A DNA stretch of 64,000 bases, taken from positions 1,922,001 to 1,986,000 of the forward strand of contig NW_027558036.1 of NCBI RefSeq assembly GCF_052425735.1, read 5' to 3'. The position numbers and the translations under genes were made by a program. The notes under the pieces were generated by a model, which saw only the letters and a program-made list of their open reading frames with translations, was not told the origin of the DNA and made no database searches. This stretch comes from Oculina patagonica (Eukaryota). Position 1 is the first letter of the stretch, and each line of letters opens with the position of its first letter. Shown here piece by piece: positions 13,532-21,176 of this stretch.

Positions 13532-14535
13532 TCATAGAGATAATGATTTAGATACTTCAAGCCTACTGGCGAGAGAATCTTTAACATAAATGTTCTTTGC
13601 TGTGGCAGTAGCCCATCGACCATGGCGCTGAAGGTTCCTTTCTGAGACACCGGAACTAGCTGCCGAAGTAGCGCCCCCTGACCTAGTGGAATGCGTACTA
13701 AACTTAGAGATATCAGGCACAATGCTCGCAAAAGAGTTCTTAAAAGACTGTCTATAAGTTGAATAGCTGATAGGCTTATTTACAGAAATAAGACGCTTAC
13801 GATTACCAGAAGAGGAAATAGGTCTAAACAAATATTCGTCTGAATTATCAGCAATAAGAGCTTTCTGCATATACAATTTGAGCAAGGTGCAAGGACACGT
13901 ATCCGTACGCGTTTCTGCGATAACAACAGATCTCCCCTCTCTTAGTTGGTCAGTCTTGCTTTTCTCAATATTAATGGTCATGAAACCCTCACTAAAGAGA
14001 ACATCCTTGCTACGAATAACGCATAACTCAGAACTTCTAAGAAAACCAGAAAATGCAAGAATGAACATAACTAAATTTCTCAATTGCAAAAGATCTTCTA
14101 AGTTAAAATCTGCAACAAGAAGCTTTAGGTGGCTCACATCCAGGGGTTCCTTCCTGTTGGTTGAAGGCTGGCTAGCAAGGCGAAGAGCTCCTTCTTTAAC
14201 AGCGATAACAGTGGGGTGTGTAGTAGGCGAATCGACTCCGGCAAGGTGGTGAGCCCATCTAAAAGCATAGAACGCACAGTTAATGGCGGAGGCAGACTTG
14301 GACGACTCAAGAAGGTGCTGCAAATAAAGGGCACAGTCGATCGGTCTAACGGGAAAGTCCTTGGAGTCCAAGACTTCTCTGGCGAAAGCTCTCCATTTGT
14401 TGAAAGCCCTGAGGTAGACTTCGGATGTCCCGGCTGCTTTAGAAGCTAACACTGTTGATTTAAGGTTCTCTTTCAATAGGGACACAGTGGCAGTGTTCTG
14501 GGTCTCTGAAGACCAGAAACCGGAAACGAAGATAT
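13532..14535 (-). CDS. Tyrosine recombinase (YR) of the PAT-like element; probable terminal exon
   Basis: Catalytic residues FLRSSE (R), KSKTD (K), HSTRSGG (HxxR), RHGRW, NIYVKD (Y). Start placed at the splice acceptor TTTTTTTTCCATAG; no in-frame ATG before the catalytic domain. Confidence 0.88.
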
Positions 14536-14990
14536 CTATGGAAAAAAAACAAATGAGAGATACGAAATATGAGAGATAACGAAAAACAGCATATAAGGTC
14601 CGCCGGCGGAAATTTAATGTGGATTCAAACAAAAACAATATTCTCTCTAAGGAATATCGATATTCGAGGTCCGTACATATCCGCAAACATAAATACCCCT
14701 CAAGGGTGAAAACGCATAGAGAAAAAGGTACAAGCGAAAAATCAGTGCCCTACAGGCAAAAAACAACGTCAATAACATCAAACTCTCATAGCCCTCAAGG
14801 CATACCCCTCTAAGGTTTAAATACATGGTAAACAAAATACCCCTCTAGGGCAAAATAGCTGATAAGGAAGACACTACTACACAACTCGGAGCGAATAAAT
14901 AAGGCGCGTAAAAGAACGACTTAACAACTAGTATTCTAAGCATACATAACCCCTCCAGGGTATGAAGCCATAACAGGTACGAGCAGCAGC

Positions 14991-15347
14991 TCAAATACCA
15001 GGGACACGAAACGACTCGCGTGAAAAATCAGAATCTAGTCTGGGGACGATGCCAAAGTCAATACGCAGAGCTAATGAAACAAAAGGGATTGGCCTACTGC
15101 CAAAAATAGAGTTCTTGGCTTTTCCTCTAATGAACAAATTAGGAAAATTAGGCAGGATAACCCAGTCATGAATAAATGTACTCCAGTGTAAACCATCTGA
15201 ACACAGGATGGGCCAGAAGTGGGCTGATCTCCAAAGGGGAACAATTAGAGTTCCTTTTGCACTGCAAAGCTTCATGTGATTGATAACTTTACAAGTTAAA
15301 TAGACAGGAGGGCACAGCCAATTATTGTGATGAGACCAATCCTGAGA
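14991..15347 (-). CDS. pol C-terminal segment (methyltransferase-like domain)
   Basis: Reads SQDWSHHNNWLCPPVYL...GTLIVPLWRSAHFWP, continuous with GVNAF at 18547 once the insertion and one TSD copy are removed. Confidence 0.85.
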   Translation of the reverse strand, partial: SQDWSHHNNWLCPPVYLTCKVINHMKLCSAKGTLIVPLWRSAHFWPILCSDGLHWSTFIHDWVILPNFPNLFIRGKAKNSIFGSRPIPFVSLALRIDFGIVPRLDSDFSRESFRVPGI

Positions 15348-15876
15348 AAATGTGACCTTGCACGGGAAAACGTACTTTAACGCTTTTTCGTTTAACGACT
15401 TAAATCGTTAGTTAGTCGTTAGATTACCGTTAGGACGACTTAGAAAATCGTTAGAAGCGTTAGAATGGTCGTTAGAAAAATTTTCTTTGTCGTTAGAAGC
15501 GTCAGAAAAATCGTTAAAAAAGATCATGCACGTCGTTAGATGTATCAAGAAAATTCGTTCAAATCGTTAGTGAAAATCGTTAGAATCTCCGTACAAGTCG
15601 TTAGTTAAAATCGTTAGAATCTCCGTTTAAGTCGTTTGAAACGTTAGAAAATCAGTTAGAATTACCTTTCAAGTAATAATGTGAACGCTAAAGGAAGTAA
15701 TACTTGTTGGATTATCGCTCTGTTATCGTTTAAATCGTTATGTTAGTCCAATTGTTTTATAAACGCACCTGATGATCATCGGTGTATTCGACTCGTGTTT
15801 AGGAGAAATGCGAACACGAAGGCAAGCAAGCAAACAAAACAGTTTATCTATACCTTAACGAATTTTTAATAAAATT

Positions 15877-16188
15877 ATGCATACATTGAAACTCGACTGG
15901 ACTTCGTTCCTTAGTCAATTCTTTAAGAAGTTGCCAAACATCAAGAAGTATCATCACTTCCGTTTCTCCAAGGAAAACCCTGGAATGATCTACTTCAAGG
16001 AATTCGTGTCTTCTCCAGAACAATCGTTCCAGTTGTTAAAGAACAATGTTATTCTTCCGCCTGCTTCAACCCTTCCTCGCGAAATCAAACCCGATGGACT
16101 GACCGAGGAACGCAAGAACTATCTTTACCGCGAAATAAGGCAGTTTTGTAAACCAGGAACCGAGCACCTCGTAGCTCCAGCGCCATGA
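15877..16188 (+). pseudogene. C-terminal remnant of a putative Sola-type transposase
   Basis: DWTSFL..IKKYHHFRF..PG..GLTEERKNYLYREIRQFC..AP resembles the C-terminus of Sola-associated proteins as I recall them; no DDD core is present. Confidence 0.55.
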
Positions 16189-16258
16189 ATTTCCGAAACG
16201 GCTCTTTTAGAGTCAATGCGCCCTGCTTTCGTCGTTTTGGACGTTTGTAGGTCGCTTA

Positions 16259-16284
16259 AAACGGCTCTTTTAGGAGCCACCAAA
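16259..16284 (+). terminator. Histone-mRNA-like 3' stem-loop
   Basis: AAAC-GGCTCT-TTTA-GGAGCC-ACCAAA, with the stem starting 74 nt after the remnant's stop codon; degenerate copy at 16200-16214. Confidence 0.6.
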
Positions 16285-18546
16285 TCTATGAAAGTCATGA
16301 TCAACATTGAGTTATCTGAGTACTTTAATAATTGCGGAATAAAGTCTATTCTTTTTATTAAATTAAGAGCTGTAAACTGCGAGAACCTTCACCTCCATAT
16401 ACGCTCCACATGGTATCCGGTCGGATCATAAGCCTTCCTTAGATTAGCCCCAACCCAAAGTCGAGTAGTCCTCAACCCAAAGTTTATTTTCCCCAGTTTA
16501 AAAGACTCTTTAGACGCCGTACTTTTCAAAAATAATTTTCCTAAATTGACAAAAAGACGCCTCTTGATTCAGACGCCAAACTTTTTGGCCGTTCCTAATA
16601 CAGTTCCAAAAAAACCAGTCAAATTACATTATAATAATCTATGAATTAGATCGGCACATTAAAAGTACGGCGTCTGAATCAAAGGCGTACTAATTTAATT
16701 CAGACGCCGATCTTTTCATGCACAGTAAAAACCCGCGTGTAAGAACCTAGGGATTTAAGAATCTTCTGGCAGAAATTTGCTTTTTTAATACCCCAAAACA
16801 TAAGAACCTGTTTAGCCAAATAAATTCCAAAGTCATTGAAGTATGGAAAAGTTGCCGCCAGATTGGACCTTTAAAGTTAAGGTTTTATAGGTTTTGTGAT
16901 TGTTGTTTGACCAAAGGAAAATTTCCATGTAAGAAAACTGAACTTCGGTCAATATTATTTTATATAAATATATTTTTATCGAACGACTATTTGGACTAAG
17001 TCTCGTTTAATTATTTCAGTATTTAGGTTGCGCGCGCGAATGGCATCGTTTCATGTTTGCTTTAACCCATTTTTGTTTTTGTTTTACAAAATTCTGTCCT
17101 TAAGTCCGTCTGAATTCCGTCAATAATTATAAACACGCACCAGTTCTTGAATAAGCCTTCTTTGTCCATAAAATCACAAGTATAAACAATTGAAAAGTTT
17201 TAAGATAAAAAGGGAAAAAGATCACACGTTCCTTGCGCGGGCCACTAATGAACTGGTATTGTTAATAAGGCCAAACTGTAAACAACTAAGTTTTGAAATT
17301 TGTAGTAAACCTTGCCGCGAATGTGTGACATTCCAATAATTAAAAATATTTTTTGTTGGTCCATGTTCGCACGCGCGGGAAAGTCACAAGTTTCATTGAG
17401 TATAAACAATAGAGAAGTTGACAAATTCACATTTACCTCAGGCGGGCCACTGACAAACTGATATTGTAAAGGAAATCTTTACTACAGAAAGTTGCTCCTT
17501 GTTCCGTTCGCACGCGGCCAAAATTTAATTAATTTTGCGCGTGTGACGAAATAATCCAAAATTATGGTGCGTCACTAAGTGAAAGACACTAGTCTGCGCG
17601 CTGTTATTTATTAAGAATTTGCTTATATAAGAAGTTTTAAAAGCGCATTAAAGAAATTTTTATCAATAAAGAACTGAGAGAAAAACTTGTTATTTTAATC
17701 TTAACAGCGAACATCTTACACTTAAATTACTTTTTTTCTCTTCGGTCGATGAAGAGAGTGGATATAGCGGGACCTGGGGCCAAGCAATCGGTTGCTATGA
17801 CAATGTTAAACCGGTTGTGTCCTGGGCACAAAGTTGCTTCGCTCATCCTTAGACGTTGCCCAAACGTTTTTGCCGAAATAATTTTACACTTAAAGACTTT
17901 TTAACGCTAAAGTTAAGGAGAAAAACACTAAAGAAACTTCCTCGCACTGCTCATTTTAATCTGATGTGGTCGAAGAGTCGAAAATATGCGACAGTTATTT
18001 TACATCTGCAGCGAATTCTGCTTTCGATGTCCGAAAGCACTGTTTTATACCATTATAAACACTGAACTTTCGGTAAGTAATAAAGATTTTATCATTTGGA
18101 AATGATTTGGCGTCCTTCTAATAAGCTAGACTAGTTCTTAGACTAGCTGTGTATCACTTCTCGTTCAATTTCTTGCTCAAAGCACATGTTTCAGTCGTAA
18201 TGTCTTCTCGATCTCGGCGCGAAATGATAACTTATGATTTTAAGCTTACTTGGCAAAGTAAGTCCGCTCGTTTATGTTTATGTCGTTAGCCAATTCGTTA
18301 GTCCGCTCGTTTATGTTTATGTCGTTAGCCAATTCGTTAGTCCGCTCGTTAGAGTCGTTTGAAAAAGTCGTTAGGCACTTCGTTAGAATGTTCTCGCAAG
18401 TCGTTAGATATTTTTGCTTGAGCGTTCAACTCGTTAATAAAGTCGTTAGAGCGTTATGAAAAGTCGTTAGTTACTCGTTAGTTAGACGTTAGTTTTTGCC
18501 CGTTTAACGAAATATCGTTAAAGTACGTTTTCCCGTGCAAGGTCAC

Positions 18547-20277
18547 AAATGCGTTGACCCCACTGGAACCAGGCTGATAGAATCTGGAATTGAACAAGGG
18601 GATCTTGGCGTTGTAAGAACAAGCAAACCTATCGCAGGAATGTGGGCCCCATAACTCGTCAAGGGCATGGAAGACTTCATCATTGATAGTGTAATCATCG
18701 TAGTCGATAAATTTACTGACATCATCAGCCGCACTATTAAGGTCTCTTGGGATCCATTGAACATCAATGTTAATGGCATTAAGCAAACAACTTTGATAAA
18801 TATCCATGGCAAGATCCTGCAACAAATGAACTTTGGAACCAGAGTTAACAATCCGAACGACGTTCTGGTTGTCAGTAAACCAGGTGACTGTCTGTGCTTT
18901 CAAAGATTCGTTAAACGCCTTCAAGGACAAAGAAACAGCTAACAACTCTCTGTACGTAGAACTCTGAGCTTTCTCGAAATCCGACCAGTTTTGATGGAAG
19001 ATCTTGCCCTCGAAGTCAATAAAACTAGCACAAGCAGAGCCAGAGGCATCCGAATAGACAATCTTGGAAGGTTTACTGCTAACAGGCCACATAGGAATCC
19101 CATTTAAGCTTGCCACATTGGATGACCAGAAATTGAGCTCAGCCAAGGCGTCTGAAGAGAGGTATACGGAAGCATTCCAAGACGGCGCAGAGTTGATGAC
19201 AGCAAACAGATTCCTGGACATAAGTCTGGAGACATTGCCGACGCAGTTGCCAAGAGAAATAATCTTCCCGCAAACACTAGCAAGCTTACGAACTGGAAGA
19301 CAAATTGAAGAAGTAGCCAAAAGAGACGACAAATCTTGTTGTAAAGAAGTAACACGCTTCTCAGTAGCAGAAATTTCAGACGTTGCCGTGTTTAAAACGG
19401 TCCCGAGCCACGTAATAATCTGCGTTGGCTCCCAAACACATTTAGCTTCGTTAGGGAGAAAGCCAGATTTAAACAAATCAGCATGAACTTGTAAACTTGC
19501 AATTTTCGCTTTGCTCTCGTCAGCAGCAGCCCCGAGGCCATCATCCAAAAACACAATAATCGCTTTCGACTCTGACCTCCATTTCTTGACTAAAGGCTTA
19601 AGCAACTTGGTAAACAGAAAGGGAGCAGAACTGAGACCGAACGGTAAAACAGTAAACTCAAAATATCTTGTGCATCCTGAAGAAAAAGTCCAAGCAAAAG
19701 ATAGAAATTGCCTGTGTTCGGGAAAAATCTCGACGTGATGATACCCTGATTTAAGGTCAAAAGAAAACATGAAATCGCCTGGATTCAGCACTTCTTTCGC
19801 GACAGTCAAATCTTCACACCTGAACTTGATTTTGTAAAGAAACTGGTTAACGTGACGAAGATCTAAAATAAGCCGTTTTTTGCCTGATTTTTGAATGGAA
19901 ACAGACAAAGGATTGATAATCACAGGTGCTTGAAATACTTCAGCGACACAACCTTGCGAGATAAGCTCATTAATAGCGGATTCAACAAAAGGTGATTCAT
20001 CCAAAGCCGAAGAATTGTTCTTAGCCACAAAGGGCGTCGGAATTTGTAAAAGTGGTAGCTTGTAACCAAACTCAATCACGTCCAGAATAAATTTAGGTGC
20101 GCGGATGTCCTTCCAGAAATTTAAAGCTCTACGGAGTCTTCCCTTGACAGATACGCAATCAACACCAGATTTCAGCAAACAGGACGCTCCATTAACGCGA
20201 AGAAAAATCAGATCATCAAAAGTTGAGTTCTCCTCTTCAAGCACAAGGTCCAAATCCAGTTCGGAATCCGAAATTAG
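18547..20277 (-). CDS. pol: pol (RT + RNase H + start of MT-like domain), interrupted at 18546
   Basis: KKRLILDLR, FDLKSGYHHV, LPFGLSSAP, FLDDG (RT); YSDAS, SSTYREL, TDNQN, WIPRDLNSAAD (RNase H); DRFA (MT-like). Frame is open from immediately after the gag TGA. Confidence 0.92.
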
Positions 20278-20973
20278 TCACTTAGATTGTTGAGCGGCCT
20301 TCGAGGTGCTGGCAAACTGTAGGGTAGGGCAACAAGCCCTCCAATGACCCGGTTGACCGCAAGCAAAACATACACCAGAGCTAGATCTCTGGGACAAACT
20401 CTGAGGACGCACACGCGAAAATAAATTAGGCAACTGTGAGGCGGAAAGTTGCGGTGTCGCAGCGGTGACAGGCGTTACAAATCTTCTTTGCTGAGCTGAG
20501 CGAGAAGCGAACCGCTTGGTAGATCTAGCTGCTCTAGACTCTGCCCTGTAGATCTTTTTCTCGTCCTCTTCATCGTCCGCAAGATCATGATGCTTGTACT
20601 CAACCACAGTTTTCCAACCGTAAGGCGATTTGTCTGCCAACAAAATTAACTTCTGGCGTTCCTTCAATAAGTCCATACCTTTGTCGAGCGCCTCCTTGGT
20701 CTTTTGCAAATCTTTGTTATCAAGGGCAGTCTGCGCGTCCTCGACGGCATCCTTAATAGCCTTGTTAGCGTTGAATTGTTCCTCGTTACTCTTTTTATTG
20801 AAATGATGGACGGGATCCCGCTTCAACCTTTTGATTTCCGACATTTGGTGCGATGCAATGGTCTCATTAGAACGCTTGAGATCCGATATAGAGGATTTAA
20901 CAAGATCCTGAATCTGAACGAGAAGACCTTGATTGTTATCCGCGATGACTTTTCGAACGCTCTCTTCATCCAT
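20278..20973 (-). CDS. gag: gag-like protein with CCHC zinc knuckle
   Basis: ATG at 20973 (MDEESVRK); RQKLILLADKSPYGWKTVVEY motif of DIRS-group gag; CFACGQPGHWRACC. Confidence 0.88.
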   Translation of the reverse strand: MDEESVRKVIADNNQGLLVQIQDLVKSSISDLKRSNETIASHQMSEIKRLKRDPVHHFNKKSNEEQFNANKAIKDAVEDAQTALDNKDLQKTKEALDKGMDLLKERQKLILLADKSPYGWKTVVEYKHHDLADDEEDEKKIYRAESRAARSTKRFASRSAQQRRFVTPVTAATPQLSASQLPNLFSRVRPQSLSQRSSSGVCFACGQPGHWRACCPTLQFASTSKAAQQSK

Positions 20974-21003
20974 AACGGGAAAAATAGGGAAAAGGACAAA
21001 TAC

Positions 21004-21176
21004 AAACAACGTAGTGTGAAGCCGAGGAAGGCTGACCGTAGAATGTCACAACTTTCTCAACGGACACTTTTCAAACCGCCTAACCGTGAGGCCTCACGCA
21101 CTACCCTCGCCCCAGTTTTCTGATACGTGTCGGCAAAATATTAATTTATGTTAATCAGGACCAACACAAATTACAT
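21004..21176 (-). repeat. Split direct repeat A1 (173 bp), 5' end of the PAT-like element
   Basis: Same sequence as 13258-13430. Confidence 0.95.

What the first reader, a model, noticed from the sequence alone, without database searches (positions are those of the whole stretch)
16186..16345. Histone-mRNA-type 3' stem-loop downstream of a DNA transposase gene
Seen: AAAAC-GGCTCT-TTTA-GGAGCC-ACCAAA (stem-loop 16263-16278), 74 nt after the stop codon and on the same strand, followed by purine-rich ATGAAAG. A degenerate copy lies at 16200-16214 and an AATAAA at 16338. Established: replication-dependent histone mRNAs end in GGYYYU-UUUN-ARRRCC-ACCA, bound by SLBP and cut with U7 snRNP; here the loop-closing pair is U-G rather than U-A. 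No histone ORF is present. Inference: the parent transposon may use histone 3' processing to tie transposase expression to S phase or oocytes, when cut-and-paste elements gain copies.
Basis: partly seen in the sequence, partly recalled or inferred. Interest (0 to 1): 0.75.

Follow-up and report, generated by a model that had tools for sequence, protein, structure and literature searches.

The report
Coral transposon ending in histone-mRNA signal
A dead copy of a cut-and-paste jumping gene in a stony-coral genome still carries, after the stump of its enzyme gene, a complete copy of the RNA-end signal that the coral's own histone genes use. Related copies and several other coral transposon families carry it too, so these elements have probably tied their expression to DNA replication.

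Summary
GGCTCT-TTTA-GGAGCC lies at 16263-16278, 74 nt after the stop codon, and is the only Rfam hit in the window (RF00032, 34.2 bits, cut-off 34).

ACCA and a downstream element at 16291-16305 match coral histone genes in sequence and spacing. The U-G top pair is the coral's normal spelling.

The signal lies in a 3.2-kb internally deleted DNA transposon (15351-18547, 47-nt inverted ends, probably a 4-bp target duplication). This element interrupts a DIRS-like retroelement. Only the last 103 codons of its DUF7869 (Sola-like, RNase-H-type fold) transposase remain, so here the signal is a relic.

A near-full-length relative and a third copy carry the signal at the same place. It is invariant (0 of 48 columns) while the rest of the 3' UTR varies (26 of 159). 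Relatives at 55-81% protein identity lack it.

In coral metagenome contigs the same signal follows Tc1/mariner-like, pogo-like and other DUF7869 transposase genes, and a probably Merlin-like one. This scan had already reported it for a Merlin element in this genome (other DNA).

RNA contigs show that a sister copy is transcribed. They read through to the AATAAA region, so cleavage at the hairpin is not shown. S-phase coupling is plausible but untested.

The parts
16263..16278 (+). SL2: histone-type hairpin with a 6-bp stem (GGCTCT/GGAGCC, U-G top pair) and the loop TTTA.
   Evidence: RF00032, 34.2 bits. The identical 16-mer follows real coral H2A, H2B, H3 and H1 genes.
16258..16305 (+). Complete processing signal: AAAAC flank, SL2, ACCA (16279-16282), an 8-nt spacer and the downstream element.
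   Evidence: 0 of 48 alignment columns vary among window, L017 and L007, against 26 of 159 in the rest of the 3' UTR. Very deep DNA and RNA contigs share only about 16259-16304.
16291..16305 (+). Histone downstream element AAAGTCATGATCAAC, the presumed U7 snRNA pairing site.
   Evidence: It scores 20.6 bits on a weight matrix built only from 22 coral histone genes (their median is 18.8, shuffled 99th percentile 10.6). Its offset of 12 nt after the stem is within the histone range of 12-14.
16196..16219 (+). SL1: decayed upstream copy of the hairpin (one G lost, C>T) with no downstream element.
   Evidence: SL1 is perfect in L017 and decayed differently in the L007 group; 5 of 25 columns vary. 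Its downstream-element score is -15.
16218..16255 (+). Middle hairpin between SL1 and SL2 (GCGCCCTGC ... GTAGGTCGC).
   Evidence: Predicted by folding and by the consensus fold of seven cassettes; 3 of the 19 predicted pairs of the whole cassette show a compensatory change.
16338..16343 (+). AATAAA poly(A) signal, about 55 nt after SL2.
   Evidence: Conserved in window, L017, L007 and L054. An RNA contig runs 16258-16389 and RNA depth is 0 from 16410.
15877..16188 (+). 103-codon ORF: the C-terminal remnant of a DUF7869 (Sola-like) transposase. Homology to relatives begins at about 15894.
   Evidence: The query end coincides with the C-terminus of the 595-643-aa proteins P0014 and P0017.
15351..18547 (+). 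Internally deleted, non-autonomous DNA transposon with TCGTTAG-type subterminal repeats.
   Evidence: Removing 3199 bp restores the interrupted retroelement pol frame. Compared with the L007 copy it lacks L007:437-2817.
15351..15397 (+). Left terminal inverted repeat.
   Evidence: 47 nt, 94% complementary to 18501-18547. A similar terminus is at L007:394-436.
18501..18547 (-). Right terminal inverted repeat.
15348..15351 (.). Probable target-site duplication AAAT, repeated at 18547-18550. The alternative reading is a 2-bp AA duplication with termini TGTG...CACA.
   Evidence: The joint in X1 contigs fits with 5 shared letters. The L007 copy is flanked by AATT.
16421..17160 (.). Insertion relative to the L007 copy, holding high-copy MITE-like inverted repeats (about 16509-16850).
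13532..21009 (-). DIRS/PAT-like retroelement (gag, RT/RNase H, tyrosine recombinase) that received the transposon.

Best explanation
Shown: positions 16258-16305 are a complete, host-type replication-dependent histone pre-mRNA 3'-processing signal. They hold the stem-loop, ACCA and a downstream element at the correct spacing.

Shown: the signal belongs to the 3' UTR of one lineage of a Sola-like (DUF7869) cut-and-paste transposon. The window copy is an internally deleted, dead derivative, so here the signal is a relic behind a 103-codon gene stump.

Inferred: in working members of the lineage the transposase pre-mRNA is bound by SLBP at the hairpin and by U7 snRNP at the downstream element. 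It is then cut a few nucleotides after the stem. The resulting non-polyadenylated mRNA would be stable and translated only while SLBP is present, that is in S phase and perhaps in oocytes or early embryos.

Inferred: transcripts that escape this cut run on to a conserved AATAAA about 55 nt further and are polyadenylated.

Inferred: coupling transposase supply to replication would favour copy gain for a cut-and-paste element. The excised donor site can be repaired from the sister chromatid, or the element can jump from replicated to unreplicated DNA.

Shown: the same signal follows the transposase genes of several other coral transposon families, so this looks like a general strategy in stony corals.
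For: - Rfam RF00032 scores 34.2 bits, inside the 33.1-38.9 range of real coral histone genes.
- The downstream element scores 20.6 bits on a matrix built from histone genes alone, at the histone offset.
- The identical 16-nt hairpin follows coral H2A, H2B, H3 and H1 genes.
- Very deep DNA and RNA contigs share only about 16259-16304 with the window and diverge on both sides, as histone 3' ends would.
- A near-full-length copy has the terminal repeat, an ORF matching P0014 residues 75-641 with a frameshift, then the stop, 74 nt and SL2. A third copy (L017) has the same layout.
- Among the three copies 0 of 48 columns vary in SL2 plus the downstream element, against 26 of 159 in the rest of the UTR (Fisher p = 6e-4). 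SL1, which has no downstream element, decayed in two of three copies.
- An exact-pattern scan of coral metagenomes gave 134 hairpins. 22 follow histone ORFs. Others follow DDE_3 (Tc1/mariner-like), DDE_1 (pogo-like), weak IS1595/Merlin-like and other DUF7869 ORFs, with downstream elements as good as those of histones.
- A sister copy is transcribed. RNA contigs cover 15907-16389, while RNA depth is 0 over DNA-deep neighbouring parts of the element.
- In the cnidarian Hydractinia, histone genes with the stem-loop are expressed in S phase and paralogues without it are not (PMC5011920).
Against: - No RNA 3' end at the hairpin is shown. The runs are kept as contigs, which break at the shared 31-mers anyway.
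- One RNA contig (16258-16389) reads through the hairpin past AATAAA.
- None of the three recovered copies has an intact ORF: the window copy is truncated, L007 is frameshifted and L017 has a 2-nt deletion near the ORF end.
- Relatives at 55-81% protein identity have a different 3' UTR without a hairpin. The family therefore does not need the signal.
- The hairpin is 74 nt from the stop, against 22-36 nt in histone genes.
- SLBP binding, U7 pairing and cell-cycle dependence were not testable here.
Confidence: 0.6

Rival explanations
1. Passenger cassette. The hairpin block was picked up from another transposon or a histone gene by recombination or template switching. It persists only because these copies are young. 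The family's mRNAs are made by ordinary cleavage and polyadenylation at AATAAA, and the hairpin does nothing.
For: The same double-hairpin cassette follows unrelated ORFs (L068 Tc1-like, L054), so it does move between elements. Relatives at 55-81% identity lack it. RNA contigs read through to about 16389. All three copies have broken ORFs.
Against: SL2 plus the downstream element shows 0 of 48 variable columns, against 16% in the flanks, while SL1 without a downstream element decays. Dozens of transposase genes of different superfamilies keep the hairpin and a histone-grade downstream element at histone spacing, mostly 22-34 nt after the stop. A neutral passenger would not keep that.
Confidence: 0.2
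2. The signal is functional but not for cell-cycle coupling. Corals use the SLBP/U7 pathway as a general 3'-end route for intronless genes. Transposons would use it for efficient, splicing-independent 3'-end formation, export or translation, or for maternal storage in oocytes, and not to restrict expression to S phase.
For: The signal also follows ORFs with chromodomain, HIRAN and kinase domains. A poly(A) signal follows the downstream element in 17 of 31 transposase-linked cases and 5 of 22 histone-linked cases, which suggests two output forms.
Against: In all animals studied, and in the cnidarian Hydractinia (PMC5011920), the stem-loop goes with S-phase expression because SLBP itself is cell-cycle regulated (established knowledge). 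Nothing here shows that corals differ.
Confidence: 0.15
3. The hairpin is a chance hairpin, or the remnant of a host histone gene or pseudogene that happens to lie near a transposase fragment.
For: The Rfam score is only 0.2 bits above the cut-off.
Against: E = 4e-06 for the window, and the exact match is expected 0.00 times. A separate downstream element is present at the right spacing. No histone ORF is nearby. The same arrangement sits at the same distance from the stop in independent copies from other samples.
Confidence: 0.02

Closest known systems
Replication-dependent histone mRNA 3' end (stem-loop plus histone downstream element; SLBP and U7 snRNP; Rfam RF00032)
   Same: It has a 6-bp stem with GG at the base, a 4-nt U-rich loop, an A-rich 5' flank, ACCA on the 3' side, and a downstream element 12 nt after the stem. 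Hairpin and element are spelled as in the coral's own H2A, H2B, H3, H4 and H1 genes.
   Different: It follows a transposase ORF and not a histone ORF. It lies 74 nt from the stop, against 22-36 nt. It is preceded by a second (decaying) hairpin and a middle hairpin, and followed by a conserved AATAAA. Processing is not demonstrated.
Merlin transposon of the same coral genome with histone-type 3' ends
   Same: A cut-and-paste transposon whose gene or genes end in the host histone hairpin and downstream element. The proposed logic is the same.
   Different: It belongs to a different superfamily (Merlin/IS1595-like against Sola-like DUF7869), has two genes and lies on different DNA. I did not see those sequences. 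I only found weak IS1595-like ORFs before the signal in metagenome contigs (L044, L025, L059).
Histone genes with a back-up poly(A) site after the downstream element (Drosophila histone genes in SLBP or U7 mutants; mammalian H2AX with two mRNA forms). This is from my own knowledge and the text quoted.
   Same: A hairpin and downstream element are followed by a poly(A) signal that is used when the histone-type cut fails.
   Different: Those are histone genes. Here the arrangement is carried by mobile elements and appears to move between them as a cassette.
Replication-coupled transposition by other means (IS10/Tn10 and Dam hemimethylation; maize Ac/Ds). This is from my own knowledge.
   Same: The functional logic is the same: transposase supply or activity is timed to DNA replication so that a cut-and-paste element gains copies.
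   Different: Those systems sense the methylation state of DNA. Here the proposed lever is an mRNA 3'-end pathway borrowed from histone genes.

Membership tests
Histone 3' UTR stem-loop / replication-dependent histone 3'-processing signal (RF00032) | A 6-bp stem with two G-C pairs at its base and a 4-nt U-rich loop | tested here: met
   GGCTCT-TTTA-GGAGCC at 16263-16278. The top pair is U-G, as in real coral histone genes.
Histone 3' UTR stem-loop / replication-dependent histone 3'-processing signal (RF00032) | Conserved flanks: A-rich on the 5' side, ACCA on the 3' side | tested here: met
   AAAAC before the stem and ACCAAAT after it. The covariance-model alignment covers model positions 1-46.
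Histone 3' UTR stem-loop / replication-dependent histone 3'-processing signal (RF00032) | Covariance-model score at or above Rfam's gathering score | tested here: met
   34.2 against 34 bits. Bona fide coral histone genes score 33.1-38.9.
Histone 3' UTR stem-loop / replication-dependent histone 3'-processing signal (RF00032) | Histone downstream element at a fixed short distance after the stem | tested here: met
   AAAGTCATGATCAAC at 16291-16305 scores 20.6 bits on a matrix built from histone genes only, at offset 12. The shuffled 99th percentile is 10.6.
Histone 3' UTR stem-loop / replication-dependent histone 3'-processing signal (RF00032) | Lies just after a replication-dependent histone ORF | tested here: not met
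   The upstream ORF is a DUF7869 transposase remnant and no histone ORF is present.
Histone 3' UTR stem-loop / replication-dependent histone 3'-processing signal (RF00032) | Transcripts end a few nt after the stem and carry no poly(A) tail | tested here: inconclusive
   Only contigs were available. One RNA contig ends at 16285, but that is also where shared 31-mers break the assembly. Another reads through to 16389.
Histone 3' UTR stem-loop / replication-dependent histone 3'-processing signal (RF00032) | SLBP binds the hairpin, U7 snRNA pairs with the downstream element, and expression is S-phase dependent | not testable with these tools
   This needs a binding assay, the coral U7 sequence and cell-cycle experiments.
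Cut-and-paste DNA transposon of the DUF7869 (Sola-like) kind | Terminal inverted repeats bounding a discrete insertion | tested here: met
   The inverted repeats are 47 nt and 94% complementary. Deleting 3199 bp restores the host retroelement's pol frame. Contigs without the insertion exist.
Cut-and-paste DNA transposon of the DUF7869 (Sola-like) kind | 4-bp target-site duplication (Sola superfamily, from my own knowledge of Bao et al. 2009) | tested here: inconclusive
   AAAT flanks both ends if the termini are GTG...CAC. A 2-bp AA duplication with termini TGTG...CACA fits equally.
Cut-and-paste DNA transposon of the DUF7869 (Sola-like) kind | Encodes a DDE-type (RNase-H-fold) transposase | tested here: inconclusive
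   Full-length relatives hit only Pfam DUF7869. The AlphaFold model of P0014 (pLDDT 73.6) has a strand-strand-strand-helix-strand-helix-strand core at 365-506. Its best PDB matches are TnsB, IstA, retroviral integrases, Mos1 and Hermes, but weakly (best E = 7e-4, TM about 0.2). Catalytic residues were not mapped.
Cut-and-paste DNA transposon of the DUF7869 (Sola-like) kind | Autonomous copy with an intact transposase ORF | tested here: not met
   The window copy keeps 103 codons only. L007 is frameshifted. L017 has a 2-nt deletion near the ORF end.

The most novel reading that the evidence does not exclude
Stony corals harbour a large set of non-histone genes that use the SLBP/U7 histone 3'-end pathway. 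The set is dominated by transposases of at least four DNA-transposon superfamilies: Sola-like DUF7869, Tc1/mariner-like, pogo-like and Merlin-like. Transposons have repeatedly taken over a complete hairpin-plus-downstream-element cassette and trade it among themselves. The effect would be to confine transposase synthesis to replicating cells.
Probability: 0.45. Interest if true: 0.85.

Novelty: new variant of a known kind. Interest (0 to 1): 0.7.

Why it matters
Histone mRNAs are taught as essentially the only users of the stem-loop/U7 3'-end pathway. If coral transposons really use it, two things follow. The pathway has a second, large class of clients. Mobile elements also have a previously undescribed way to time their enzyme to DNA replication, which is when a cut-and-paste element can gain copies.

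The idea is directly testable. Coral or sea-anemone RNA can be mapped for hairpin-terminated transposase transcripts, and replication blocks should remove them. I found no paper describing this in four searches. This scan had already noted it for a Merlin element in the same genome. The present case adds a second superfamily, evidence of sequence constraint, and evidence that the cassette is shared between families.

Tried and rejected
- **Chance hairpin:** rejected.
- **Histone pseudogene or captured host fragment:** rejected. No histone ORF is present, and the same layout occurs in independent copies.
- **Filler DNA created when this copy lost its interior:** rejected, because the near-full-length L007 copy has the same 3' UTR.
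- **Ancestral feature of the whole DUF7869 family:** rejected. Relatives at 55-81% identity (L001, L003-L006, L138-L147) have another 3' UTR with no hairpin.
- **SL1 as a second working signal:** rejected. It has no downstream element and it decays.

Dead ends:
- The search of earlier findings by sequence returned nothing.
- The exact 103-aa ORF is not in the protein collection.
- A PDB sequence search with P0014 gave nothing meaningful.
- The terminal repeat was not found in the other short contigs.

Limits and steps not taken:
- Contigs cannot show RNA ends, so the reads tool could not settle where transcripts stop.
- I did not type a histone protein from memory to fetch host histone loci. 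I obtained them through an exact DNA-pattern scan instead.
Full report
**1.

The + strand reads TGA (16186-16188), then 74 nt, then AAAAC-GGCTCT-TTTA-GGAGCC-ACCAAAT with the hairpin at 16263-16278. A degenerate copy lies at 16200-16214 and AATAAA at 16338-16343. Rfam's Histone3 model (RF00032) matches 16258-16302 at 34.2 bits, against a gathering score of 34, with E = 4e-06. It is the only family above threshold in the 64-kb window. The 19-mer occurs once, against 0.00 expected. The window holds no N.

**2. Where it sits**

The ORF at 15877-16188 has 103 codons with nothing coding in frame upstream. It is the C-terminal end of a large family: 1301 cluster representatives match at E <= 0.001, and the end of the query coincides with the C-terminus of the longest members, P0014 (643 aa) and P0017 (595 aa). 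Those proteins carry Pfam DUF7869.

The stump lies inside a discrete element, 15351-18547. The element has 47-nt terminal inverted repeats (94% complementary) and TCGTTAG-type subterminal repeats. It interrupts the pol gene of a DIRS/PAT-like retroelement on the - strand. Deleting 3199 bp restores one continuous pol frame, and contigs with exactly that joint exist in a coral metagenome.

The duplicated target is AAAT if the termini are GTG...CAC, or AA if they are TGTG...CACA. An AlphaFold model of P0014 (pLDDT 73.6) has an RNase-H-like strand/helix core. Its best, though weak, PDB matches are TnsB, IstA, retroviral integrases, Mos1 and Hermes.

The possible 4-bp duplication is compatible with that, but I did not prove the superfamily.

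**3. The signal is complete and spelled as in the host**

An exact-pattern scan of metagenome contigs for the hairpin plus ACCA gave 120 stretches with 134 hairpins, nearly all from coral metagenomes.
- Twenty-two follow ORFs ending as H4, H3, H2A, H2B or H1, at 22-36 nt after the stop.
- Six of those 22 use the window's exact 16-mer with the U-G top pair. The rest have C-G. The 'non-canonical' pair is therefore the coral norm, as earlier notes said (s1-286766, s1-294208).

A weight matrix built only from the downstream regions of those 22 histone genes scores the window at 20.6 bits, for AAAGTCATGATCAAC at 16291-16305, offset 12. The histone median is 18.8 at offsets 12-14, and the shuffled 99th percentile is 10.6.

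Real coral histone genes score 33.1-38.9 bits on RF00032, so 34.2 is ordinary for this host.

In two DNA runs and two coral metatranscriptomes, very deep contigs match only about 16259-16304 and diverge on both sides. Word depth at 16285 reaches about 74,600 in X15 DNA and about 7,200 in X19 RNA. I read these contigs as the host's histone 3' ends sharing the module. That reading is inference.

**4. It belongs to the transposon lineage**

The closest relatives found by the word search are P0155 (92% identity) and P0160 (95%).

P0155 comes from one locus, seen in several coral metagenome assemblies (L007-L016). It holds a similar left terminus and an ORF matching P0014 residues 75-641 with a frameshift. 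The stop follows, then 74 nt, then the identical hairpin and downstream element. The window copy is therefore an internal-deletion derivative. It lacks L007:437-2817 and has gained 740 bp at 16421-17160.

L017, a JGI coral metagenome contig, carries two perfect hairpins 64 nt apart.

Among these three independent copies:

| Region | Variable alignment columns |
|---|---|
| 16258-16305 (SL2 plus downstream element) | 0 of 48 |
| Rest of the 3' UTR | 26 of 159 |
| SL1 (no downstream element) | 5 of 25 |

The first two rows differ at Fisher one-sided p = 6e-4. SL1 has decayed in two different ways in two of the copies. This is the pattern expected if SL2 plus its downstream element was under selection in the propagating lineage.

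**5. It is not a feature of the whole family**

Relatives at 75-81% identity (L003-L006, L138-L147) share a different 3' UTR that diverges about 11 nt after the stop and has no hairpin. A 55% relative (L001) has only a poly(A) signal.

More distant DUF7869 ORFs carry the signal again, at 66 and 124 nt after the stop (L062, L123). Gain, or exchange, has therefore happened more than once.

**6. It is not limited to this family**

In the metagenome loci the same hairpin and a histone-grade downstream element follow several kinds of ORF:
- DDE_3 (Tc1/mariner-like) ORFs: 13 cases, mostly 22-34 nt after the stop, including an apparently intact transposase in L068.
- DDE_1 (pogo-like) ORFs: 6 cases.
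- Weak IS1595/Merlin-like ORFs.
- A two-gene element.
- ORFs with chromodomain, HIRAN or kinase domains.

The whole double-hairpin cassette of the window consists of SL1, a middle hairpin, SL2, the downstream element, and an AATAA or AATAAA motif some 20-35 nt further on. It recurs after the Tc1-like ORF of L068 and after an unrelated ORF in L054. The cassette appears to be traded between elements.

This scan had already reported histone-type ends for a Merlin transposon in this genome, on other DNA (s1-293918, s1-293958, s1-293919).

**7. RNA**

In the two metatranscriptomes, contigs about 95-97% identical to the window cover 15907-16285, 15916-16210, 16249-16320 and 16258-16389. RNA depth is 0 over 15522-15854 and 17742-18407, where DNA depth is high. 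This is therefore transcription of a sister copy and not DNA carry-over. The variants in these contigs match L017.

One contig passes the hairpin and AATAAA, and coverage is 0 from 16410, so a read-through form exists that is presumably polyadenylated.

Whether hairpin-terminated molecules exist cannot be read from contigs, which break at the shared 31-mers. The fall in RNA depth between 16285 and 16287 is 6- to 9-fold, against 1.4- to 2.2-fold in DNA. This suggests that the abundant histone-type RNAs end there, but it is only suggestive.

**8. How it most likely works**

Shown: a complete host-type signal, conserved in the lineage, downstream of the transposase stop and followed by a conserved poly(A) signal.

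Inferred from the established pathway: SLBP on the hairpin and U7 snRNP on the downstream element direct a cut just after ACCA. The resulting mRNA depends on SLBP, which is itself limited to S phase. Transcripts that escape the cut are polyadenylated further on.

In the cnidarian Hydractinia, presence of the stem-loop goes with S-phase expression (PMC5011920).

The benefit to a cut-and-paste element would be copy gain through sister-chromatid repair, or through jumping ahead of the replication fork. This is established reasoning for P, Ac and IS10, and I cite it from my own knowledge.

In this window the gene is a stump, so the signal is a fossil.

**9. Literature**

Four full-text searches found no description of transposons with histone-type 3' ends. 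A 2026 preprint on the evolution of the pathway does not mention transposons or non-histone genes.

**10. Verdict**

The best explanation carries 0.6 confidence. I class the finding as a new variant of a known kind: a known signal with a new class of users. This instance is one of several in the genome, and it is a dead one.

Noticed in passing
window 16196-16343; L068:2500-2690 (-); L054:1660-1835 (-); L123:9184-9400; L062:6090-6252 (-): The whole double-hairpin 3' cassette (SL1, middle hairpin, SL2, downstream element, AATAA or AATAAA) is shared by unrelated genes. These include an apparently intact Tc1/mariner-like transposase (L068) and an unknown ORF (L054). The cassette seems to move between coral transposon families.
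   Followed up: partly
L091:650-1381, L075:1708-2394, L111:701-1402 (chromodomain); L092:5726-6094 (HIRAN); L133:260-967 (protein kinase): The coral histone hairpin and downstream element also follow ORFs with chromatin, replication-fork and kinase domains. These may be host S-phase genes or further mobile elements.
   Followed up: partly
metagenome loci L018-L137: AATAAA or ATTAAA lies within 60 nt after the hairpin in 17 of 31 transposase-linked signals but in only 5 of 22 histone-linked ones.
   Followed up: partly
L066, L093 (coral histone clusters): Some real coral histone genes score below Rfam's gathering score for RF00032 (33.1-33.4 bits against 34). Default Rfam annotation will therefore miss some coral histone 3' ends.
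   Followed up: yes
window 13532-15350 and 18548-21009 (- strand): A DIRS/PAT-like retroelement has its pol ORF split by the transposon insertion. Removing 3199 bp restores one frame through '...PGSSGVNAFSQDW...'.
   Followed up: yes
window 16509-16850: Very high-copy MITE-like inverted repeats are nested in the transposon. DNA word depth reaches about 29,000. They give weak matches to plant and animal miRNA-precursor models, which are probably just long hairpins.
   Followed up: no
window 16285-16287: Summed RNA contig depth of the histone-like module falls 6- to 9-fold here, against 1.4- to 2.2-fold in DNA. This hints that mature coral histone-type RNAs end about 7 nt after the stem.
   Followed up: no
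window 15347/18547: Coral metagenome run X1 holds contigs that join 15347 to 18547. These are copies or alleles of the retroelement without the transposon, so the insertion may be polymorphic or specific to one retroelement copy.
   Followed up: no
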